NCBI RefSeq assembly: GCF_011386835.1
Contig: NC_088803.1
Coordinates: forward strand, 19,220,001 to 19,284,000
DNA: 64,000 nt
Direction of reading: 5' to 3'
Origin: Chrysemys picta bellii
Taxonomy: Eukaryota
The notes under the pieces were generated by a model. That model was not told the DNA's origin. It did not search any database and saw nothing but the letters and a program-made list of their open reading frames with translations. The position numbers and the translations under genes are program-made. This document shows, piece by piece, positions 192 to 62,309 of this stretch; position 1 is the first letter of the stretch, and the number at the start of each line of letters is the position of its first letter.

Positions 192-842
192 GTGAGCTGA
201 GAACAGATTTTAGCCAAGGGGGAATGCAGATTGACTCGGGGCAGGGAGCAGAATGCGGCCCTGACTCCATTGCAGACAGGGGTAGGCTGTACAGATTCCT
301 GGGTCTATCGCCGGCCCTCAGAGGGCAGAGAGAGGCTGTTTACACATGAAATGTGCACCTGCACCGCTGGACTGCCTGGGTTTAAACACTAACTATGCCC
401 ACAGAAGGGCTTGCCTGCCAGTGTCTGCAATCCACCGCCCCGAGGGGCCCGACCTAGCACTGCCTGCAGCGGGGGTCAGGTCGGCACAACTACGGCACTG
501 GGGGAGGGGTGGATTTCCCCTGACAGACAGAGCTATGCTGATGTATGTCCCCAGCATACACCAGCCTGGTGTGTAGAGGGATGGGGGAAGTGGGAGCCAG
601 GACTCCTGGGTTCCCAGCGCTGCCACTAACTTCCAAAGTCTGTTCTCAGTCACCTAAATCTGGAGTGAATCCACAGGAACTTCTCCAGCTGCACTGGGGA
701 AAGTGAGAACAGGGCCGGGACAGGCAAGAGGATGAGCGGGGGTGGTAACTGGACTGGAAAGAGTCAATGGGGGCGAGGGTTGGTAAGCAGGCTGTGTGAG
801 ATCAATTACCCCTCCCCTGCCCCACACCCTATACTGCCGCCC

Positions 843-1171
843 TAGTGCCCATTATACAGTATAGCCGCTGCTTCCCCTCCCCCACCCTCTGCTGCCCGTA
901 GTGCCCATTATACAGTATAGCCGCTGCTTCCCCTCCCCCACCCTCTGCTGCAGTATAGCCGCTCCTTCCCCTCCCCCGTCCTCTGCTGCCCCTAGTGCCC
1001 ATTATACAGTATAGCTGCCCCTTCCTACCCCCACTCTCTGCTGCCCCTAGTGCCCGTTATACAGTACAGCCACCCGTTCCCCCCTTCCACCCTCTGCTGC
1101 CCCTATTGCCCGTTATACAGTATAGCCGCTCTTTCCCCACCCCTGCCCTCTGCTGCCCGTAGTGCCCGTTA
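843..1171. repeat. ~56-bp minisatellite (about 6 copies) in the RNase A intron
   Basis: Unit TAGTGCCCATTATACAGTATAGCCGCTGCTTCCCCTCCCCCACCCTCTGCTGCCC starts at 843 and 899 and recurs to 1171. Confidence 0.9.
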
Positions 1172-1233
1172 GAGGACAAAGCTCTGCCATGCATTACGGT
1201 GTCTTGTTCTTGCAGGCCTGCCCTGCTTCCGCA

Positions 1234-1668
1234 ATGGGTCTCTCTCGGGATGGGCTCAGCCTGCTCTTGTTCCTGGTGCTGGCCTGGTGCCTGGCCCCGC
1301 CTGTCCGCTGCCAGGGCCCGCGCTACGAGAAGTTCCTGCGGCAGCACCATGACCACCCGCGGACCAACGCCGGGCGGGATTACTGTGGGGCCATGATGCA
1401 GCGCCGGGGCATGGCCCGGCCCTGCAAAGACATCAACACCTTCATCCACGCCCCCAAGGCCCAGATCCAGGCTGTCTGCGGCTCCGGGGGCATCGAGTAC
1501 TGGGGCAGGCGGCGCAGCCGGGCTCAGTTCCCCGTCACCACCTGCTCGCTGAAGGGCCCCCCGTGGGGCCGGTGCAGCTACCTGGGCCACACCAACCACA
1601 GATTCCTCGTCGTCACCTGCGACCCGGCAGGCTGGCCCATGCAGTTCGATGAGAGCCACATCATGTGA
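1234..1668 (+). CDS. Secreted RNase A-superfamily protein A (144 aa), with His119->Gln
   Basis: Signal peptide MGLSRDGLSLLLFLVLAWCL; FLRQH (His12); CKDINTFIH signature (Lys41); six mature Cys; C-terminal WPMQFDES where PVHFD is expected; single coding exon after the acceptor at 1215. Confidence 0.93.
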   Translation: MGLSRDGLSLLLFLVLAWCLAPPVRCQGPRYEKFLRQHHDHPRTNAGRDYCGAMMQRRGMARPCKDINTFIHAPKAQIQAVCGSGGIEYWGRRRSRAQFPVTTCSLKGPPWGRCSYLGHTNHRFLVVTCDPAGWPMQFDESHIM

Positions 1669-1737
1669 CGGCGCCGGGCACCACCGCCCTGCCCCGCCTT
1701 GGCATGGAACTGAGTCCTCGGCCACGCGTTGTGTCGA

Positions 1738-1880
1738 ATGGGCCAGACCCCCGGCTGGTGTGAATGGACTCTAGCTCCATGGGGGTCAGTGGCACCAGCC
1801 CCCCAGCTGGTGTGAAAGGACTGTAGCTCTGTGGGGGTCAATGGGGCCAGCCCCCCAGCTGGTGTCAATCTGCATCTCTC
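1738..1880. repeat. ~51-bp tandem repeat (3 units) in the 3' UTR of RNase A
   Basis: Units like GGCCAGACCCCCGGCTGGTGTGAATGGACTCTAGCTCCATGGGGGTCAGT; same family as 37949-38252. Confidence 0.75.
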
Positions 1881-2174
1881 TATTAACATTGGCACCACGG
1901 GAGCAGCGCTTCAAAGCCATGCAGCTCCTGTCCGGTGAGATGTGCTCTGGACACAAGCCCAGGACTGCCCGGGCCACGCAGGCTGCCTGGTTGTTCGCCC
2001 CGCTGCGTGCGTCTCTGGGTGGCCTGGACACCAGCTGCGCTGCAAAAGGCGGGGGTGGGGAGCTGTCCGTGTATGGGGGAGCTGGGTTGGGGGGCGGGGC
2101 GAGTGCAGTGCAGGCAGTGGGGCAGGTGCATCTGGCTATGCTCAGATGTCCTGTTCTTGCTCCGCTCCTGACTC

Positions 2175-2180
2175 AATAAA
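2175..2180 (+). terminator. Polyadenylation signal of RNase gene A
   Basis: AATAAA about 500 nt after the stop codon. Confidence 0.65.
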
Positions 2181-2389
2181 GGCTCCATTCTGCAAAGCAG
2201 CTGGGCTTGTGTCCCCCCAGTGCCGTCTCTATTCCTTCTCCTTGGCCTAGAAACCCCCCGGGTTCCTCAGGGCTAAATCCGCCCCTGCTGTACACTTGGG
2301 TCGCCCCGCCAGTGCCGTGCGGCCAGATCCCCCCAGTGTAATTCAACATAGCTTCAGTGGAGTCAAGCCTTCTACGATGCTGATTGGGC

Positions 2390-2580
2390 CCCAGGGCAGG
2401 GGACTGGCTGGCTCAGAAGGGTGGGGAATGGGGCACGGGGCTTTTCCCCTCTAGGGGGTACAGGCTCTCATCTGGCCCCAGGGCAGGGACTGGCTGGCTC
2501 AGGGGGCAGGGAATGGGGCATGGGGCTTTCCCCCTTTAGAGGGTGCTGGCTCCCATCTGGCCCCAGGGGGCAGGGAATGG
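2390..2580. repeat. GC-rich ~75-85-bp tandem repeat family
   Basis: Unit CCCCTCTAGGGGG..GGCTCCCATCTGGCCCCAGGGCAGGGACTGGCTGGCTCAGGGG..GGGAATGGGGCA; also at 19950-20270, 27110-27550 and 59690-59890. Confidence 0.8.
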
Positions 2581-4716
2581 ACTATGTCTCCTTTCGTATT
2601 CTCCACCTTCCCAGCCGACACCATTCCTGTCGGTCCCTGGCCGGTACCTTTTTGATGGATGTGCTGGCCACAATGCCCCCTCCTCCCCAGGCCATCTGAT
2701 CTGCGTGGCCTTGGCCGGGCCATTCCCCCCGGCCCCCCAACCGTTCCTGAGCCTGCCCACTCCTCCCTCTTGGCTGGGGCCCCCGGTGCAGCTGCCAGGA
2801 ACCAGAGAGTGGGACTTGGGGCTGCCCCAACGGGCAATGTGGCAGCCGGTTCCGGCGCCTGGAGAAGGACAATGGGCCAGTGACCTGTGCATTCAGTGCG
2901 GAGCCAAAACAATGGGGCCGGCCTCAGGCAACTCCACTAAATCGTCCCCTGGGGGTCACCTGCCCCATGGTGGCCTTGCCAAGCCGGATCAGCCCTTGGG
3001 CTGGGCGGTGTGGCATCCTGTCTCCAGAGTGCTGGTCCTTGGACAGGAAACCCGCTTACTGCTGCGCCTACCTCGGCCAGGCCCTCCTGGCAAGTCAGGT
3101 TCTGCCCCGAAACACCAGGCTTCCCTTGTGGGGAAGCGACTGGGGCTCCTGACAGTCCCCGGCTCTGACCTAACAGGACGGTCCCGAGAAGTTGGCCCTT
3201 CAGCAGTAAGCAGCTCTCCAGCCATATGGGCCCAAGGGTAAGGCCCTGGACTGGAAGTGGAGACACCTGAGTTCAGTTGTGCTCCCTGTGTGACTTAGGG
3301 GGCAGATTTTCCCCATCCCCTTTGGCTTTACAGTAGAAATTTATGGGGAAAAGGGGCCCAAATCCCTCCGTGGCTTGGAAAGTCTCAGTGGTTTTTTTTA
3401 AATAAAAGCTCGGTGCCTCAGTTTCTCCATCTGGAAAATGATGCCAACCTACCACAGCTCCCGCCTGCAGGGCCCCCGTTGTGCCAGGTGCTGTGCAGAC
3501 CCCGACCAAGATCAGAGCTCCATAGTGCTGGGTTCTGTACACTCCCGCAGTAACAGACAGGCCTCGTCTCAATTTGCTCACAGTGCAAGGCTAGGGTTTT
3601 CAGAGCAGTTTGAGGCTACAAAGCAGCCTATGCAGAGAAACAGTGGGAGAAAGGAAGATGATTATCTGCCTTTGTGGGGAAACTGAGGCACGGGGAGGCC
3701 AAGGGACTTGACCAAAGGCTGGGACCATGACCCAGGTCTCCCACCTCCAGGTCAATGCCTCAGCAGCCTCCTTTGGCATCAAGAAGTTTGTAGCCTGGTA
3801 CATGGAGCCCACCACCAGGGTTGGATTAACTGCCCGGCACCCCACACAGAACCTCTACTCCCTAGTGCCCCAACACACAGAGATCTTCCCTGCCCCCTCA
3901 CAGCCCAGCACCCTCCCCCCAGGCCCTCCAGAGACCCACTCCCCCAAGGTCTGCACTCACCGGCCCTCTGGGAGCCAACTGTCTACTGGGCTGAGCTGGC
4001 AGCGCAGCCAAGGGTGGTCCCAGGGCGGGGAATCGCCCCGGCCCCTTGGGAGTGGTGCGATCAGCCAGGCCAGTGCCTGCCCTGGCCGGGCTCCCTCAGG
4101 ACCCACTTGCCTGGCTCTGGAGGGGTCCAGCCAAGTCCCCCACACCGTCCCTGCCCGCAAACTGACCGAGCCTGGCCAGGCTTCTGCACCAGTCCCAGGC
4201 GGCTCAGCTCCAGGGAGACAGGTGGGGCCCCACAGGTGGTGGGAAGCAGAGACTGCCTGAAGCTAGAGGTGCACTGAGGTCTGGGTAGGGGGCAGAAAGA
4301 AGCCGGAGGTTGAGGCCAGGGGGTGGAGAGGAGCCCTTGGCCAACCAGCGGGCAGGCTGAAAGGAGCAAGTAGTGGGCAGCGGAGGGGAGCCAGCGGACT
4401 GGCGGGATCTCAGGGCACAGTGCAAGCAGAGCAGGACAGGGCCCCTTCTGAGCATGAGCCCGGCTCCATCGCGCCATTGTAAACCCGGCACTGCCCACCA
4501 CGCCTTCCCCTAGAGGTCACCGAGCAAGACCCTATGGTCCCACCCCAGCCAACCCTGCTCCTGGCTTCGGAGGTCGCCAGGCTCCCTAGTGCTGGAAGGA
4601 GCTGGCTAAACAACTAGCCGGTGCCCAGTGCTCACTGGCTTCATGCCCCACCCGACATCTCTGGGCCTGGGCAGGTGAAACTGGCTCAAGGGAGCCCTCT
4701 CTGGCCAGCCAGGCTG

Positions 4717-4796
4717 TATATAAGGGGCACATGCCAGGCTGGAGACTCAGACGCTCAGCTTTAGACCCTGTGCTCCAGCAGGAGCGAAGCCACCAG
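4717..4796 (+). promoter_or_regulatory. TATA box and non-coding exon 1 of RNase gene B
   Basis: TATATAA at 4717-4723 in the same GGCTGTATATAA context as gene A; donor CAG|GTAAGG at 4797; acceptor GTTGCAG ending 5784, 6 nt before the ATG. Confidence 0.7.
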
Positions 4797-5306
4797 GTAA
4801 GGCAGAGACTGGATTAAACCCAGGGTGGGGAGCAGGGCCGGGGCGGGGCGGTGGGGTGCCCAGCTCAGCCAGAGGAAAGGCTGAGAAGGTGACTGGATCA
4901 GTGAAGGATCTAGCTAAGGGGAACAGAGCTCTGGACCTTCCCCAGCCCCCTGAGACCAGCTGGAAAGAAATGGACAAAGAGACTGGCCCAGAGGGACAGA
5001 CACCCACAGCTTTTGGAAAGATGCTCACCTAGGCAGGTACACACACCCCAGGCAGGGCATAGAGTGGGGCGACCAGATGTCCCAGTATTAGGGGCTTTGT
5101 CTTATTTGGACAAATATACCCTCTGCCCCTGAAAAAAAGTGCCCCAACTTTTCACACTTGCTAACACAGACAGGCAGAAACACCGAGTGGTGAAAGCCAA
5201 AGACCTCAGCACGCGACACAAATGAAAAGCCAGGCAGACAAAACCCAGAGAGAGACACATAGATGCAAATCGATCCAGTGAGGCCAGGCATTGATTGGCT
5301 TGAAGC

Positions 5307-5530
5307 CAGGACTCCTGGGTTCTATCCCCAGCTCTGGGAGGGGAGTGAGGGCTAGTGGTTAGAGCAGGGGGACTGGGAGCCAGGACTCCTGGGTTCTACC
5401 ACTGGCTCTGGGATAGGAGTGGGTCTAAGGTTATAGCTGGGAGGGCTAGAAGCCAGGAGTGGGGTCTAGTTGTTGGAGGGAGGGGCGGGGGGCTGGGCAT
5501 CAAGACTCCTGAGTTCTATTGCTAGCTCCT
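5307..5530 (+). repeat. Tandem array of tRNA-head-like (MIR/core-SINE-like) ~73-bp units
   Basis: A-box-like CTAGTGGTTAGAGC and B-box-like GGGTTCTATCCC in repeating units; CCAGGACTCCTGGGTTCTA at about 5309 and 5380. Confidence 0.7.
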
Positions 5531-5790
5531 GCAGGGCGTGTGTGACTCCAGACAGTCACTTAGTCTGAGATTTTCCAAAACTGCTTAATCAATTTGCGGA
5601 GCCAGTGCCCACGGAGGGAAGCCTTAGAAACCTCAGGCTCAGTGTCTCCATGCCTCAGTTTCCCACCCGTACCACGGACACACGGCTATGCCCCACGTTT
5701 GCGAGGTCAGCCCAGGAGGGCTTCTCCCTCGCTGCCGTGGCTGAGGGCACGTACCGAGCCAGACGGCCCTGCGTGATGTTGCAGGTGGCG

Positions 5791-6216
5791 ATGGGCGTTC
5801 TGAAGGGCACCGGCCCCCTCTTTCTGGCACTGCTGGTGGCCTGCCTGCTCCTGTGCGCCTCAACCCACGGCCCGCGCTATCAGAAGTTCCTGCGGCAGCA
5901 CCACGACAACCCGCGGACCAATGCTGGGCGGGATTACTGCTGGGCCATGATGCAGCGCCGGGGCATGGCCCGGCCCTGCAAAGACATCAACACCTTCATC
6001 CACGCCTCCCGGGCCCAGCTCCGGAGCGTGTGTGGGGACGGGGGCACGCCCTACCAGGGCATGCGCCGCAGCAAGAGGCCGCTGGCCGTCACCACCTGCG
6101 AGCTCAGGCGGATGCAGGGCGCCCGGTGCATCTACCGCAGCCATGCGGCCTCCAGGTACATTGTCATTGGCTGCGTCCACGGCATGTGGCCGGTGCAGTA
6201 CAACGAGAAAGCGTGA
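5791..6216 (+). CDS. Secreted RNase A-superfamily protein B (141 aa), with His119->Gln and Asp121->Asn
   Basis: Signal peptide MGVLKGTGPLFLALLVACLLLC; FLRQH; CKDINTFIH; six mature Cys; C-terminal WPVQYNEKA; Arg-rich. Confidence 0.93.
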   Translation: MGVLKGTGPLFLALLVACLLLCASTHGPRYQKFLRQHHDNPRTNAGRDYCWAMMQRRGMARPCKDINTFIHASRAQLRSVCGDGGTPYQGMRRSKRPLAVTTCELRRMQGARCIYRSHAASRYIVIGCVHGMWPVQYNEKA

Positions 6217-6281: not shown

Positions 6282-6287
6282 AATAAA
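6282..6287 (+). terminator. Polyadenylation signal of RNase gene B
   Basis: AATAAA 66 nt after the stop codon. Confidence 0.75.
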
Positions 6288-47082: not shown

Positions 47083-50072
47083 CTAACCTAGTGAGGAGGG
47101 CTTTAAACTAGGTTCACCGGGGGAAGGAGACCTGAGGTAAGTGGGGAAATGGGATCCTGGGAGGAAGCACAAGCAGGAGAGCGCAAGAGGGGAGGACTCC
47201 TGTCTCATGCTGAGAAAGAGGGACGATCCATGAGTTATCTTAAGTGCCTATACACAAATGCAAGAAGCCTGGGAAACAAGCAGGGAGAACTGGAAGTCCT
47301 GGCACAGTCAGGGAACTATGATGTGATTGGAATAACAGAGACTTGGTGGGATAACTCACATGACTGGAGTACTGTCATGGATGGATATGAATTGTTCAGG
47401 AAGGACAGGCAGGGCAGAAAAGGTGGGGGAGTTGCGTTGTATGTAAGAGAGGAGTATGACTGCTCAGAGCTCCGGTATGAAACTGCAGAAAAACCTGAGA
47501 GTCTCTGGATAAAGTTGAGAAGTGTGAGCAACAAGAGTGATGTCGTGGTTGGAGTCTGCTATAGACCACCAGACCAGGGGGATGAGGTGGATGAGGCTTT
47601 CTTCTGGCAACTAGCAGAAGTTGCTAGATCGCAGGCCCTGGTTCTCATGGGAGACTTTAATCACCCTGATATCTGCTGGGAGAGCAATACAGCGGTTCAC
47701 AGGCAATCCAGGAAATTTTTGGAAAGTGTAGGGGACAATTTCCTGGTGCAAGTGCTGGAGGAACCAACTAGGGGCAGAGCTTTTCTTGACCTGCTACTCA
47801 CAAACAGGGAAGAACTAGTAGGGGAAGCAAAAGTGGATGGGAACCTGGGAGGCAGTGACCATCAGATGGTCGAGTTCAGGATCCTGACACAAGGAAGAAA
47901 GGAGAGCAGCAGAATACGGACCCTGGACTTCAGAAAAGCAGACTTTGACTCCCTCAGGGAACAGATGGGCAGGATCCCCTGGGAGAATAACATGAAGGGC
48001 AAAGAGGTCCAGGAGAGCTGGCTGTATTTTAAAGAATCCTTATTGAGGTTGCAGGAACAAACCATCCCGATGTGTAGAAAGAATAGTAAATATGGCAGGG
48101 GACCAGCTTGGCTAAACAGTGAAATCCTTGCTGATCTTAAACGCAAAAAAGAAGCTTACAAGAAGTGGAAGATTGGACAAATGACCAGGGAGGAGTATAA
48201 AAATATTGCTCAGGCGTGCAGGAGTGAAATCAGGAAGGCCAAATCACACTTGGAGTTGCAGTTAGCAAGAGATGTTAAGAGTAACAAGAAGGGTTTCTTC
48301 AGGTATGTTAGCAACAAGAAGAAAATCAAGGAAAGTGTGGGCCCCTTACTGAATGAGGGAGGCAACCTAGTGACCGAGGATGTGGAAAAAGCTAATGTAC
48401 TCAATGATTTTTTTGCCTCTGTCTTCACGCACAAGGTCAGCTCCCAGATTGCTGCACTGGGCAGTACATCATGGGGAGAAGGTGACCAACCCTCTGTGGA
48501 GAAAGAAGTGGTTCGGGACTATTTAGAAAAACTGGACGTGCACAAGTCCATGGGGCCGGATGCGCTGCATCCGAGGGTGCTAAAGGAGTTGGCGGATGAG
48601 ATTGCAGAGCCATTAGCCATTATTTTTGAAAACTCATGGCGATCAGGGGAGGTCCCAGATGACTGGAAAAAGGCTAATGTAGTGCCCATCTTTAAAAAAG
48701 GGAAGAAGGAGGATCCGGGGAACTACAGGCCAGTCAGCCTCACCTCAGTCCCTGGAAAAATCATGGAGCAGGTCCTCAAGGAATCAATTATGAAACATTT
48801 AGAGGAGAGGAAAGTGATCAGGAACAGTCAGCATGGATTCACGAAGGGGAAGTCGTGCCTGACTAACCTAATTGCCTTCTATGATGAGATAACTGGCTCT
48901 GTGGATGAGGGGAAAGCAGTGGATGTGTTATTCCTTGACTTTAGCAAAGCTTTTGATACGGTCTCTCACAGTATTCTTGCCGCCAAGTTAAAGAAGTATG
49001 GGCTGGATGAATGGACTGTAAGGTGGATAGAAAGCTGGCTAGATCGTCGGGCTCAACGGGTAGTGATCAATGGCTCCATGTCTAGTTGGCAGCCCGTTTC
49101 AAGCGGAGTGCCCCAAGGGTCGGTCCTTTTGTTTAATATCTTTATTAATGATCTGGAGGATGGTGTGGACTGCACTCTCAGCAAGTTTGCAGATGACACT
49201 AAACTAGGAGGGGTGGTAGATACACTAGAGGGTAGGGATCAGATACAGAGGGACCTAGACAAATTAGAGGATTGGGCCGAAAAAAACCTGATGAGGTTCA
49301 ACAAGGACAAGTGCAGAGTCCTGCACTTAGGACGGAAGAATCCCATGCACTGCTACAGACTAGGGACCGAATGGCTAGGTAGCAGTTCTTCAGAAAAGGA
49401 CCTAGGGGTCACAGTGGACGAGAAGCTGGATATGAGTCAACAGTGTGCTCTTGTTGCCAAGAAGGCTAATGGCATTTTGGGCTGTATAAGTAGGGGCATT
49501 GCCAGCAGATCGAGGAACGTGATCGTTCCCCTTTATTCAACATTGGTGAGGCCTCATCTGGAATACTGTGTCCAGTTTTGGGCCCCACACTACAAGAAGG
49601 ATGTGGAAAAATTGGAAAGAGTCCAGCGGAGGGCAACAAAAATGATTAGGGGTCTGGAGCACATGACTTATGAGGAGAGGCTGAGGGAACTGGGATTGTT
49701 TAGTCTCCAGAAGAGAAGAATGAGGGGGGATTTGATAGCAACCTTCAACTACCTGAAGGGGGGTTCCAAAGAGGATGGAGCTCGGCTGTTCTCAGTGGTG
49801 GCAGATGACAGAACAAGGAGCAATGGTCTCAAGTTGCAGTGGGGGAGGTCCAGGTTGGATATCAGGAAAAACTATTTCACTAGGGGGGTGGTGAAACACT
49901 GGAATGCATTACCTAGGGAGGTGGTGGAGTCTCCTTCCTTGGAGGTTTTTAAGGCCCGGCTTGACAAAGCCCTGGCTGGGATGATTTAGCTGGGAATTGG
50001 TCTTGCTTTGAGCAGGGGGTTGGACTAGATGACCTCTTGAGGTCCCTTCCAACTCTGATATTCTATGATTCT
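47083..50072 (+). mobile_element. Young CR1 LINE (end of ORF1, complete ORF2, 3' UTR)
   Basis: Starts in the ORF1 tail ([10 protein letters not shown]); ends ATTCTATGATTCT; TSD AAGTGG at 47077-47082 and 50073-50078. Confidence 0.97.
47149..49989 (+). CDS. CR1 ORF2: AP endonuclease plus reverse transcriptase (946 aa, stop-free, 3-aa deletion in the RT)
   Basis: Endonuclease motifs [30 protein letters not shown]; RT motifs FLDFSKAFD and FADD; [11 protein letters not shown] lacks GPV. Confidence 0.95.
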
Positions 50073-51579: not shown

Positions 51580-52551
51580 ATGGATCCTGCTCGGAGGACC
51601 CCAGTGAATCAGTCTTCAGCGGCAATCACTGAGGTTGTCCTTCTTGGTTTCTCCAGCCTCGGCCAGCTGCAGCTGCCCCTCTTCCTCCTCTTCCTCATGA
51701 TGTACATGCTGACGCTGCTGGGGAACGCTCTGGTTATCTTCATGATCAGGCTGGACCGCCACCTCCACACGCCCATGTATTACTTCCTCAGCCACCTCTC
51801 GCTGCTGGAGCTGCTCGTCACCACCACTGTCACACCCACGATGCTCCTTCTCCTCCTCTCCCAGCGCAAGACCATCTCCTTCTTGGCCTGCGCCCTCCAG
51901 GGCTACGTCTACATCCTGGCAGGCTCAGCTGAGGTTCTTCTGCTGGCCGCCATGTCTGTGGACCGCTATGTGGCCATCTGCAACCCACTGCGCTACACGG
52001 CCATCATGAGCGGCCAGGTCTGCCTCAGCCTGGTGTTGTCCTGCTGGATGAGCAGCTTCCTCTTCATCTCGACTTCCATGGTGCTCAAGGCCAGGCTGCC
52101 CTTTTGTGGGCCCAACGCCATCGACCACTTCTTCTGCGACAGCGCCCCCTTGCTAGAGCTGATCTGCACCGACACCAGCCTCCTCTGGGCCCTGGACTTG
52201 GCCATCTCGTCCTTCCTCCTCCTCAGCTCCGTCTCTGTGACAACTGTGTCCTATCTCTGCATTGTCGCCACGGTGATGAGGATGCCCTCAGCCCAGGGCA
52301 GGCAAAAGGCCTTCACCACCTGCACCTCCCACATCATGGTGGCCTCGCTCTACTACGGCAGCTCCATCTTCATCTACGTCAAGCCAGCTGACAACTCCTC
52401 CGCGGGCTTCAACAAGGCAGCCACGGTGCTGAACACGGTGGTGACACCCCTGCTCAACCCCATCATCTACAGCTTCAGGAACAAGGCGGTGAAGGAAGTG
52501 CTGAGGGATGGGATGGGCCGGATGGGCGCTGCCCTCCCTAAGAGTGCTTGA
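51580..52551 (+). CDS. Olfactory receptor, family 6-like (323 aa, intact)
   Basis: NQS sequon; LHTPMYYFLSHLSLLE; MSVDRYVAICNPLRY; HFFCDSAPLLELICTDT; GRQKAFTTCTSH; TPLLNPIIYSFRN; acceptor CACTTGCAG ending 51574. Confidence 0.95.
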   Translation: MDPARRTPVNQSSAAITEVVLLGFSSLGQLQLPLFLLFLMMYMLTLLGNALVIFMIRLDRHLHTPMYYFLSHLSLLELLVTTTVTPTMLLLLLSQRKTISFLACALQGYVYILAGSAEVLLLAAMSVDRYVAICNPLRYTAIMSGQVCLSLVLSCWMSSFLFISTSMVLKARLPFCGPNAIDHFFCDSAPLLELICTDTSLLWALDLAISSFLLLSSVSVTTVSYLCIVATVMRMPSAQGRQKAFTTCTSHIMVASLYYGSSIFIYVKPADNSSAGFNKAATVLNTVVTPLLNPIIYSFRNKAVKEVLRDGMGRMGAALPKSA

Positions 52552-60959: not shown

Positions 60960-61898
60960 TTAACTTTTCACCCGCCAGGATATGTACCTGTTGATTAACT
61001 TCCTCATGGAGCTTTTGATCTCCTTGTTCCTCAGGGTGTAGATCATGGGGTTGGTGAGGGGGAAGACCACAGTGTGGAACACAGCCACCACCTTCTTCAG
61101 GGGGGCGGCCCGGAAGGGCAGGGCATAGATGTAGATGGCCGGGCCGCACATCACGAAGACCACGATGATGTGTGATACACAGGTGGAGGCCACTTTGCTC
61201 TCCCACCTGGGGGAGTGAGTCCGCAGCCGGAGCAGCAGGGCAGCATAGGATATGATGAGGAGGATGAAGCACATCATGATGACCACACCATTGTTGAGGA
61301 ACATGATCATCTCCACCACGTAGGTGTCAGCGCAGGCCAGCTTCACCAGCTGATGGACGTCACAGAAGAAGTTGTCCAGGATGTTGGGGCCGCAGAAGGG
61401 CAGCTGGATGGACAGACCAAAGAGGATGATGCCATGAACGAAGCCCCCTGCCCACGCTGCCCCCACCACGGTGCAGCAGATCTCTCTGTTCATGAGTGTG
61501 GCGTAGCGCAGAGGTTTACAGATGCCCACGTAGCGGTCATAGGCCATGGCCATGAGCAGGAAGGCCTCGGCGCCCCCCAGGAAGTGGAGGAAGAAAAGCT
61601 GGGCCATGCAGCCCCCATAGGAGATGGTCTTGCAGAGGGAGAAGAAGTCGGCCAGCATCTTCGGAGGGGTGACGGAGCAGTAGCAGATGTCCAGGAAGGC
61701 CAGATTAGCCAGGAAAAAATACATGGGGGAGCTCAGGCAGGGGTCACTCTGGATGGTGAAGATAATGAGGAAATTCCCTGGGAGGATGATGATGTAGAAG
61801 AGCAGGAAGAAGAAAAAGAAGAGAAGCTGGACCTTCTGCATCTGGGATAGTCCCATCAGTATGAACTCTGTCGCCCCAGTGCAGTTCCCCTGCTCTAT
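60960..61898 (-). CDS. Olfactory receptor, family 4 (OR4N/OR4M-like); frame intact but initiator ATG missing, possible pseudogene
   Basis: IILPGNFLIIFTIQSDP, SPMYFFLANLAFLD, QLFFLHFLGG, MAYDRY, FFCDVHQLVKLACADT, PLTNPMIYTLRNKEIK. The listed ORF start at 61928 is GTG; the expected Met position (61898-61896) is ATA. Confidence 0.88.
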   Translation of the reverse strand: MEQGNCTGATEFILMGLSQMQKVQLLFFFFFLLFYIIILPGNFLIIFTIQSDPCLSSPMYFFLANLAFLDICYCSVTPPKMLADFFSLCKTISYGGCMAQLFFLHFLGGAEAFLLMAMAYDRYVGICKPLRYATLMNREICCTVVGAAWAGGFVHGIILFGLSIQLPFCGPNILDNFFCDVHQLVKLACADTYVVEMIMFLNNGVVIMMCFILLIISYAALLLRLRTHSPRWESKVASTCVSHIIVVFVMCGPAIYIYALPFRAAPLKKVVAVFHTVVFPLTNPMIYTLRNKEIKSSMRKLINRYISWRVKS

Positions 61899-62309
61899 CC
61901 CATCTATGTGGATCCCTGTCTTGCACACACATGGAGAATGAGAATGGATATGGTGACTCGATATTACAGCTGGTCAAAAAATGGAATTTTTTTTTTTATT
62001 AAAAACGTTCAAGATCATTTTTTTGTTTCCAAGGGCAGTAGAGAGAAAGAAGGCTCTGTAGAAATTAGTAAAATGCTTGGAGACAATTTCAATTCTTAGT
62101 TACACCAGTTCAGACTTTAGAGTTACCCACAGAGTTAGCAAACAGATGCTACAGAGTTACTCCATAGATATTATGAAATGGTTGGAATTATTCAATAGAT
62201 GCTATGGAATTGTTCAACAGATACAACAAATGGAAGAGAGTGGAAGTTGATAGTAATGAATATAATTCAGATATTAGGAATTGTAGAAAATCGATAAGGG
62301 AAGCCAAAG

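What the first reader, a model, noticed from the sequence alone, without database searches (positions are those of the whole stretch)
1234..6216. Tandem pair of secreted cationic RNase A paralogues that both replace catalytic His119 with Gln
Seen: both ORFs are intact with signal peptide, TATA box, splice sites and polyA signal. Both keep His12 (FLRQH), Lys41 (CKDINTF) and six Cys, but the C-terminal PVHFD motif reads PMQFD (CAG at 1642-1644) and PVQYN (CAG at 6196-6198); gene B also has Asn at Asp121. Known: His119 is the general acid of the RNase A triad, and catalytically dead members exist in mammals (RNases 9-13) with non-enzymatic roles. Inference: the shared W-P-x-Q ending sits in the otherwise ~41%-identical C-terminal halves, so the change probably predates the duplication and has been kept. 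These may be a reptile lineage of pseudo-RNases that bind RNA or act as Arg-rich antimicrobial or egg/reproductive-tract proteins, arising independently of mammalian RNases 9-13.
Basis: partly seen in the sequence, partly recalled or inferred. Interest (0 to 1): 0.78.

Follow-up and report, generated by a model that had tools for sequence, protein, structure and literature searches.

The report
Turtle angiogenin-like RNases lacking catalytic histidine
Two neighbouring turtle genes encode secreted, very basic angiogenin-type ribonucleases that have each lost one of the two catalytic histidines, on separate occasions, yet both stay under purifying selection, so their selected role (probably host defence) does not need normal RNA cleavage.

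Summary
Window 1234-1668 (gene A, 144 aa) and 5791-6216 (gene B, 141 aa) are intact RNase A-family genes beside METTL17. Both keep His12, Lys41 and six Cys. Both read CAG (Gln) at the His119 position.

- Gene B has Gln in every turtle sampled, including a pleurodire.
- Gene A has His (CAC) in sea turtles, Chelydra and the pleurodire Emydura. It has Gln (CAG) only in the four families of Testudinoidea.
- The single-copy relatives beside METTL17 in Alligator and most squamates have His.
- Anolis and Phrynosoma have Arg there.

That makes three independent losses in one gene group.

Both genes are constrained (omega 0.06-0.29; omega=1 rejected). Gene A shows no relaxation after its loss. A ~140-bp gene-conversion tract keeps the His12/Lys41 half of A and B nearly identical, while the His119 half is 41% identical.

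The most likely reading is cationic secreted host-defence proteins (net +9 and +15) with strongly reduced RNase activity.

The proteins are auto-annotated as "ribonuclease-like", and I found no paper describing them. Two first-stage notes of this scan cover the same stretch.

The parts
1200..1215 (+). Pyrimidine tract plus AG: likely splice acceptor of the coding exon of gene A
   Evidence: tgtcttgttcttgcag directly upstream of the ATG. It is conserved in nine cryptodires, and Emydura has an equivalent ctctctcgcag. Its use was not shown by reads.
1234..1668 (+). Gene A: complete CDS of an angiogenin-like RNase A family protein (144 aa, stop included)
   Evidence: ORF. Pfam RnaseA 89.7 bits. 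Best solved relative is mouse angiogenin-4, E 1e-35. Orthologues found in 15 listed turtle entries.
1234..1311 (+). Signal peptide of gene A (26 aa); mature chain starts QGPRYEKF
   Evidence: Hydrophobic N-terminus that aligns with the signal peptide of mouse Ang4 in 2j4t. The cleavage site is inferred from that alignment and was not predicted by a dedicated tool.
1315..1452 (+). Gene-conversion tract shared with gene B; it holds the His12 codon (1345-1347) and the Lys41 codon (1426-1428)
   Evidence: A-B nucleotide identity is 87-100% here, against 51-73% on both sides. dS is 0.03-0.34 here, against 0.36-1.18 in the C-half. Within this tract, paralogues in one species are closer than Emydura-cryptodire orthologues.
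1642..1644 (+). CAG = Gln at the His119 (angiogenin His114) position of gene A
   Evidence: The codon is CAC (His) in five non-testudinoid turtles and CAG in five testudinoids, a single C-to-G change.
2175..2180 (+). AATAAA, first polyadenylation signal after gene A
   Evidence: An AATAAA/ATTAAA lies 278-612 nt after the stop in nine of ten turtles.
5770..5784 (+). Likely splice acceptor of the coding exon of gene B
   Evidence: tgcgtgatgttgcag upstream of the ATG, conserved in all ten turtles. Some public models instead start at in-frame upstream ATGs, for example the 188-aa Malaclemys model.
5791..6216 (+). Gene B: complete CDS of the second angiogenin-like RNase (141 aa, stop included)
   Evidence: ORF. 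Pfam RnaseA 90.1 bits. AlphaFold2 model mean pLDDT 90.5. Foldseek TM 0.85-0.89 to turtle egg-white RNase and angiogenins.
5869..6006 (+). Gene-conversion tract shared with gene A; it holds the His12 codon (5899-5901) and the Lys41 codon (5980-5982)
6196..6198 (+). CAG = Gln at the His119 position of gene B
   Evidence: Every turtle copy sampled has Gln, encoded as CAG or, in sea turtles, CAA. That is a synonymous change within Gln.
6202..6204 (+). AAC = Asn at the Asp121 position of gene B
   Evidence: The Alligator relative also has Asn here (HFNEGV) while keeping His119.
6282..6287 (+). AATAAA, polyadenylation signal of gene B, 65 nt after the stop
   Evidence: The signal lies 54-102 nt after the stop in all ten turtles.
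14779..20381 (+). METTL17 exons: the syntenic anchor of the locus
   Evidence: tblastn of Chelonia and Natator METTL17. The same neighbour (Pfam Rsm22) follows the RNase gene(s) in Chelonia, Emydura, Mauremys, Anolis and Alligator.

Best explanation
Genes A and B are a tandem pair of secreted, three-disulfide, angiogenin-type RNase A proteins beside METTL17. Their selected function no longer depends on the general-acid histidine.

Shown:
- Gene B lost His119 (to Gln) before the last common ancestor of living turtles.
- Gene A lost it by a single CAC-to-CAG change on the stem of Testudinoidea.
- The lizard counterpart lost it (to Arg) in Anolis and Phrynosoma.
- All copies stay intact and under purifying selection.
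- A roughly 140-bp gene-conversion tract keeps the His12/Lys41 half of A and B alike.

Inferred: canonical transphosphorylation is cut by about two or more orders of magnitude. The proteins act mainly through their strongly cationic, Arg-rich surface and the retained His12-Lys41 phosphate pocket. They would bind and damage microbial envelopes or bind nucleic acids and other polyanions, as mouse Ang4, RNase 3 (ECP) and RNase 7 do independently of catalysis.
For: - Family and fold: Pfam RnaseA; best solved relatives are angiogenins; confident model and fold match.
- Site: Gln aligns with the catalytic His.
- Distribution in gene A: His in Chelonia, Caretta, Lepidochelys (two species), Natator, Dermochelys, Chelydra and Emydura. 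Gln in the window species, Emys, Terrapene, Platysternon, Mauremys and Gopherus. These are exactly the four families NCBI places in Testudinoidea.
- Distribution in gene B: Gln in all turtle copies whose C-terminus is modelled (about 30 sequences), encoded as CAG or CAA.
- Relatives: Alligator and 11 squamates have His; two Anolis species and Phrynosoma have Arg. The minimum is 3 changes on the gene tree.
- Selection: omega for A is 0.08 (F3x4) or 0.29 (equal codon frequencies), and for B 0.08 or 0.25. omega=1 is rejected at p<1e-8.
- No relaxation: omega for testudinoid gene A after the loss is 0.07-0.32. It does not differ from background (p 0.3-0.7), and omega=1 is rejected (p 6e-13 to 0.0075).
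- Charge: mature A is net +8 to +11 (pI 9.6-10.0); mature B is net +11 to +15 (pI 9.9-10.65), with 14-18 Arg.
- Literature: human ANG H114R keeps about 2% activity on tRNA (PMC5296752). Mouse Ang4 H12A loses RNase activity but keeps full bactericidal activity (PMC9207454). RNase A H12K/H119Q is used as an inactive control (PMC5730577).
Against: - No enzymatic, antimicrobial or binding assay exists for these proteins.
- The effect of a single His-to-Gln change in an angiogenin-type enzyme was not found in the searchable literature.
- Gln11, His12, Lys41 and Thr45 are invariant in both genes, even in gene B, which has lacked His119 since before crown turtles. That conservation could mean residual catalysis still matters. 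It is confounded by gene conversion with gene A, which remained His-bearing in many lineages.
- Expression and tissue are unknown.
Confidence: 0.6

Rival explanations
1. The proteins are still working ribonucleases. Gln at position 119 hydrogen-bonds to the leaving group, or water takes over as the acid. A low or substrate-specific cleavage (for example of tRNA anticodon loops, or when activated on a ribosome) remains the selected function.
For: Gln11, His12, Lys41, Thr45 and the CKDINTF motif are invariant in all 20 turtle copies. Human ANG H114R keeps about 2% activity rather than none. Angiogenins are intrinsically weak enzymes on standard substrates whose biology still depends on catalysis (established knowledge of angiogenin). 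The omega values are as low as for a typical enzyme.
Against: The same catalytic residue was replaced three times, by two chemically different side chains (Gln and Arg), with no detectable change in constraint. That is easier to explain if catalysis was already dispensable. Gene B also lacks Asp121, the partner of His119. Conservation of the His12/Lys41 half is partly explained by the conversion tract.
Confidence: 0.27
2. The Gln-bearing genes are young, unprocessed pseudogenes drifting after loss of function. They are still open only by chance.
For: A catalytic residue is missing. No direct expression data were obtained.
Against: Open frames, acceptor and polyA signal are intact in ten species that include both turtle suborders, Pleurodira and Cryptodira. 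omega=1 is rejected for both genes, and for testudinoid gene A alone. In gene B the Gln codon changed synonymously (CAG/CAA) but never to another residue.
Confidence: 0.03
3. Gene A's Gln in testudinoids was copied from gene B by a short gene conversion rather than arising by point mutation. The two Gln residues would then share one mutational origin.
For: A and B demonstrably exchange sequence in the N-terminal half. Both carry GTG CAG T at the site in several species.
Against: The flanking paralogue-specific bases were not co-converted. Gene A keeps CCC/CCT and TTC where gene B has CCG and TAC, so any tract is 7 nt or shorter and cannot be told apart from a C-to-G substitution. Either way the event is testudinoid-specific and post-dates the duplication.
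Confidence: 0.1

Closest known systems
Mouse angiogenin-4 (Ang4; PDB 2j4t) and other mammalian angiogenins (RNase 5)
   Same: It is the best solved sequence relative, E 1e-35, with the match running through the signal peptide and the C-terminal GWPxxFDES motif. It shares the three-disulfide fold, with Foldseek TM 0.85-0.89. It is secreted and cationic. Ang4 kills bacteria without needing RNase activity (PMC9207454).
   Different: Angiogenins keep the full His-Lys-His triad, and their angiogenic and tRNA-cleaving roles need it. The turtle proteins have Gln at the second His, and gene B also has Asn for Asp121. Identity is about 40-45%.
Green turtle egg-white RNase (PDB 2zpo) and the 'canonical' turtle RNases (P0007, P0008)
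   Same: Turtle, three-disulfide RNase A family; top Foldseek hit for the gene B model, at 47% identity.
   Different: It belongs to a different paralogue group in the tree, keeps His119 (PVHYDKSI), and is not encoded in this window.
Mammalian RNases 9-13 (non-catalytic RNase A paralogues)
   Same: Secreted RNase A-fold proteins that lack catalytic residues and are presumed to act non-enzymatically.
   Different: The origin is independent. The turtle genes nest, with 96/92 support, among His-bearing sauropsid angiogenin-like genes. They have lost only His119 (plus Asp121 in B), and they keep His12, Lys41 and the CKxxNTF signature. RNases 9-13 were not put in the tree.
Human ANG H114R (ALS-associated variant; PDB 5m9t)
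   Same: It carries the same substitution that is naturally fixed in the Anolis and Phrynosoma orthologues. It shows what replacing this His does: about 2% residual activity on tRNA (PMC5296752).
   Different: It is a rare disease allele in an otherwise catalytic protein, not a lineage-wide, selectively maintained state. The turtle residue is Gln, not Arg.
Eosinophil cationic protein (RNase 3) and RNase 7
   Same: Very basic, Arg-rich RNase A proteins whose bactericidal action is reported to be independent of catalysis (stated in PMC9207454). Gene B has 14-18 Arg and pI up to 10.65.
   Different: They are four-disulfide mammalian paralogues that keep the catalytic triad. They are not closely related to the turtle pair.

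Membership tests
RNase A superfamily (Pfam PF00074) | Match to the family profile above the curated threshold | tested here: met
   89.7 and 90.1 bits against a cut-off of 23.1, covering profile positions 2-121 and 2-119.
RNase A superfamily (Pfam PF00074) | RNase A fold | tested here: met
   AlphaFold2 model of gene B has mean pLDDT 90.5, and 94-98 over the mature domain. Foldseek probability is 1.00 and TM 0.85-0.89 to 2zpo, 4qfi, 2j4t and 1ang.
RNase A superfamily (Pfam PF00074) | Catalytic triad His12-Lys41-His119 | tested here: not met
   His12 and Lys41 are present and invariant. His119 is Gln in both window genes. They are family members by descent and fold, but not by the enzyme's active-site definition.
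RNase A superfamily (Pfam PF00074) | CKxxNTF signature and conserved disulfide cysteines | tested here: met
   CKDINTF is present. Six Cys columns are invariant across 38 relatives.
RNase A superfamily (Pfam PF00074) | Secretory signal peptide; whole CDS in one exon behind a 5' non-coding exon | tested here: inconclusive
   There is a hydrophobic N-terminus aligned to the Ang4 signal peptide. It forms a helix at residues 7-23 of the model. A conserved acceptor lies before the ATG. No signal-peptide predictor or transcript evidence was available.
Angiogenin-type (three-disulfide) RNases | Only three disulfides (no Cys65-Cys72 pair), pyroglutamate-type N-terminus, C-terminal GxPVHxDxS segment | tested here: met
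   There are six Cys in the mature chain. Gene A starts QGPRY. The C-terminus reads GWPMQFDESHIM against GWPVHFDESFI of Ang4. The His within that segment is the residue replaced.
Angiogenin-type (three-disulfide) RNases | Ribonucleolytic activity needed for function | not testable with these tools
   This needs recombinant protein and RNase assays.
Mammalian inactive RNases 9-13 | Orthology to, or common descent with, the RNase 9-13 genes | tested here: not met
   The nearest relatives are His-bearing Alligator and squamate genes in the same position beside METTL17. His is retained in gene A of many turtles. The loss is therefore recent and independent. RNases 9-13 themselves were not included in the tree.

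The most novel reading that the evidence does not exclude
One sauropsid angiogenin-like gene group has turned from enzyme into binding protein three separate times: gene B in stem turtles, gene A in stem Testudinoidea, and the single-copy gene in Anolis and Phrynosoma. Each time the His12-Lys41 phosphate pocket was kept. On this reading the pocket has been re-used as a ligand site for RNA, nucleotides, or the phosphate groups of microbial lipids. A gene-conversion tract holds that pocket constant while the other half of the protein diversifies. This would be a natural replicated experiment in pseudoenzyme evolution.
Probability: 0.3. Interest if true: 0.6.

Novelty: new member of a known kind. 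Interest (0 to 1): 0.45.

Why it matters
Non-catalytic RNase A paralogues and catalysis-independent antimicrobial RNases are known from mammals. No reptile case was found in the searchable literature.

In this locus the same catalytic histidine was lost three times in closely related genes. His-bearing orthologues are still alive in sea turtles, snapping turtle, side-necked turtle, alligator and most lizards. That gives matched natural pairs, differing at one key residue, for asking what an angiogenin-type protein does when it cannot cleave RNA normally. The question can be tested with routine recombinant protein work.

The locus is also a clean example of a short gene-conversion tract maintaining one functional half of a duplicated gene pair.

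Tried and rejected
- **Runs:** The look-up of sequencing runs found no run recorded as RNA. Fourteen small runs guessed to be RNA hold 6-23% of the words. That is suggestive only.
- **Literature:** searches for reptile or turtle RNases lacking His119, and for single H119Q/H114Q mutants, found nothing relevant.
- **TATA box:** not confirmed.
- **Age of the duplication:** not resolved. The free tree pairs A with squamates and B with Alligator (supports 86/80 and 91/74), but the AU test does not reject A+B as one clade (p 0.39).
- **Codon model:** my first run printed odd tree lengths because of the scaling unit. I rewrote it with synonymous-rate scaling. The omega estimates depend on the codon-frequency model (0.06-0.09 with F3x4, 0.2-0.3 with equal frequencies or NG86), so I give both.
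- **Assembly error, private allele, pseudogene:** all rejected.
- **A nearby His standing in for His119:** His13 in RQHHD, His in ESHIM of gene A and His in CVHG of gene B were considered and set aside. The first two also occur in the His119-bearing gene A orthologues, and none tracks the loss. No model coordinates were available to measure distances.
- **Big representative protein search:** not used, because no claim here rests on absence of relatives.

Full report
**What is there.** The window carries two open reading frames on the + strand: 1234-1668 (gene A, 144 aa) and 5791-6216 (gene B, 141 aa). Both match Pfam RnaseA at about 90 bits. Their best solved relatives are angiogenins. Mouse angiogenin-4 (2j4t) matches gene A at E 1e-35, from the signal peptide through the C-terminal motif. 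That alignment puts GWPMQFDES of gene A opposite GWPVHFDES. The codons at 1642-1644 and 6196-6198 are both CAG. His12 (RQHHD), Lys41 and the CKDINTF signature, Thr45 and six mature-chain Cys are present. Gene B also has Asn where RNase A has Asp121. A pyrimidine-rich AG acceptor precedes each ATG and an AATAAA follows each stop. Both features are conserved across ten turtles. A TATA box could not be confirmed.

**Whose genome and which locus.** The closest database proteins are all from turtles. Gene B is 98% identical to a Malaclemys model and identical in its C-terminal half to Chrysemys. The window therefore comes from an emydid-like turtle. METTL17 exons lie at 14.8-20.4 kb on the same strand. 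I fetched the orthologous loci of nine other turtles: Chelonia, Natator, Dermochelys, Chelydra, Emydura, Mauremys, Gopherus, Platysternon and Emys. Each has gene A followed 3-5 kb later by gene B, and METTL17 follows where it falls inside the fetched stretch or is called. Anolis and Alligator each have a single RNase gene directly upstream of METTL17, with no second copy within 10 kb.

**Distribution of the missing histidine.**
- Gene B has Gln in every turtle copy whose C-terminus is modelled, about 30 sequences. These include the pleurodire Emydura (WPAQYNEKA). The codon is CAG, or CAA in sea turtles, which is a synonymous change within Gln.
- Gene A has CAC (His) in Chelonia, Natator, Dermochelys, Chelydra and Emydura, and His in the Caretta and Lepidochelys proteins.
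- Gene A has CAG (Gln) in the window species, Emys, Platysternon, Mauremys and Gopherus, and Gln in the Terrapene protein. These Gln-bearing species fall in exactly the four families that NCBI places in Testudinoidea. One C-to-G change on the testudinoid stem therefore explains gene A.
- A profile search brought in the squamate and crocodilian relatives. Eleven squamates and Alligator sinensis have His. Anolis carolinensis, A. sagrei and Phrynosoma have Arg (CGG in Anolis).
- On the gene tree the minimum is three changes at this site.

**Age of the duplication.** The tree gives a well-supported clade (96/92) made of [Alligator + gene B] (91/74) and [gene A + squamates] (86/80). An AU test does not reject gene A and gene B as one clade (p 0.39), so the age of the duplication is open. 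Under either topology the ancestral residue is His, and the two turtle Gln residues are separate events. A micro-conversion from B to A cannot be excluded. It would be at most 7 nt long, because the flanking paralogue-specific bases were not transferred.

A and B are 93% identical in the N-terminal half of the mature protein (43/46), 41% in the C-terminal half (28/69) and 27% in the signal peptide.
- At the nucleotide level, identity jumps from 51-67% to 87-100% over about 140 bp (A 1315-1452, B 5869-6006), then falls back to 51-73%.
- Synonymous divergence is 0.03-0.34 inside the tract, against 0.36-1.18 in the C-terminal half.
- Inside the tract, paralogues within a species (6-18 differences in 138 nt) are as close as, or closer than, orthologues between Emydura and cryptodires (12-18 for gene A). 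In the C-terminal half, orthologues (24-37 differences) are far closer than paralogues (67-86).
- Emydura A and B share lineage-specific changes there.

This is the signature of recurrent gene conversion. It covers the His12 and Lys41 codons and stops well short of codon 119.

**Selection.** Pairwise Nei-Gojobori dN/dS is mostly 0.1-0.4 for both genes. I wrote a Goldman-Yang codon model and fitted it on the accepted species tree.
- One-ratio omega for gene A is 0.08 (F3x4) or 0.29 (equal codon frequencies).
- One-ratio omega for gene B is 0.08 or 0.25.
- omega=1 is rejected at p<1e-8, and this holds for the C-terminal half alone.
- In a two-ratio model, omega of gene A within Testudinoidea (after the loss) is 0.07-0.32. 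It is not different from the His-bearing background (p 0.3-0.7), and omega=1 is rejected (p 6e-13 to 0.0075).

The genes are therefore not decaying. Losing the histidine did not relax constraint on gene A.

**What the proteins look like.** The AlphaFold2 model of gene B is confident (mean pLDDT 90.5). It superposes on green-turtle egg-white RNase and on rat, mouse and human angiogenin at TM 0.85-0.89. Mature gene A proteins carry net +8 to +11 (pI 9.6-10.0). Mature gene B proteins carry net +11 to +15 (pI 9.9-10.65), with 14-18 Arg. There are no N-glycosylation motifs.

**How it most likely works.** The steps above are shown. The rest is inference. In RNase A and angiogenin, this histidine protonates the leaving group (established enzymology). 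Human ANG H114R, the very substitution fixed in Anolis, keeps about 2% activity on tRNA (PMC5296752). RNase A H12K/H119Q is used as an inactive control (PMC5730577). Mouse Ang4, the closest solved relative, keeps full bactericidal and membrane-permeabilising activity when catalysis is removed by H12A. The same paper reports this for RNase 3 and RNase 7 (PMC9207454). The simplest reading is that this sauropsid gene group works as secreted cationic host-defence proteins for which catalysis was already dispensable. That would explain why the histidine could be lost three times without any change in constraint. I put this at about 0.6.

**Main rival (about 0.27).** Weak or substrate-specific cleavage may still matter. 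Gln11, His12, Lys41 and Thr45 are invariant even in gene B. That argument is weakened by the conversion tract, which keeps copying this half between A and B.

**Other rivals.** Pseudogene and assembly-error readings are rejected by the data above.

**Limits.**
- No expression data were obtained.
- The run search gave only a hint of transcripts.
- Trionychia, Kinosternidae, most Pleurodira, birds and crocodiles other than Alligator sinensis were not sampled.
- The codon model is my own implementation, and its omega depends on the codon-frequency assumption.
- RNases 9-13 were not placed in the tree.

**Novelty.** The proteins are in public databases as automatically named 'ribonuclease-like' or 'angiogenin-4-like' entries. 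I found no paper describing the missing histidine in reptiles. Non-catalytic and catalysis-independent RNase A proteins are a known kind, so this is a new member of that kind. It adds a replicated-loss pattern and a gene-conversion mosaic.

Noticed in passing
window 834-1171 and 1743-1865: Tandem repeats flank gene A. Units of 56 bp (about 4 copies, with nested 38- and 94-bp periodicities) end about 30 bp upstream of the putative acceptor of gene A. A 52-bp unit (2.4 copies) lies in its 3' UTR region.
   Followed up: partly
window 35261-36241 (+), 51580-52551 (+), 60960-61928 (-): Three intact single-exon olfactory receptor ORFs (Pfam 7tm_4, E 1e-44 to 1e-57) lie downstream of METTL17. By recollection, olfactory receptor genes also lie near the mammalian RNase cluster.
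   Followed up: partly
window 47149-49989 (+) and 38520-39791 (-): A 946-aa open ORF with endonuclease and reverse-transcriptase domains (non-LTR retrotransposon ORF2, possibly still intact), and a second reverse-transcriptase fragment.
   Followed up: no
P0082 (Pangshura), P0085/P0088 (Mauremys; same chromosome record as the Mauremys A/B pair), P0080 (Chelydra): Other turtle RNase A-family paralogues have lost more of the active site. They have Phe or another residue at the His119 position (NRLPVFYEENM), and the Cys-Lys41 pair is absent from the CKxxNTF motif. They may be turtle counterparts of the mammalian inactive RNases.
   Followed up: no
L012 10001-10426 (Alligator sinensis): The Alligator relative keeps His119 but already has Asn at the Asp121 position (HFNEGV), like turtle gene B. 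If it is the gene B orthologue, Asp121 was lost before His119 in that lineage.
   Followed up: partly
P0002 (Chelonoidis, Ensembl model), P0038/P0046/P0048 (Natator and Chelonia 'METTL17' models clustered with gene B), L002 13909-20435: Public gene models at this locus are inconsistent. One model joins a gene A-like N-terminus to a gene B C-terminus. At least one call (L002, 565 aa) fuses the gene B RNase domain to METTL17. Several gene B models start at upstream in-frame ATGs, giving 146-188 aa.
   Followed up: no
L003 668-3134 (-) (Emydura): An MHC class I-like gene lies upstream of gene A in Emydura.
   Followed up: no
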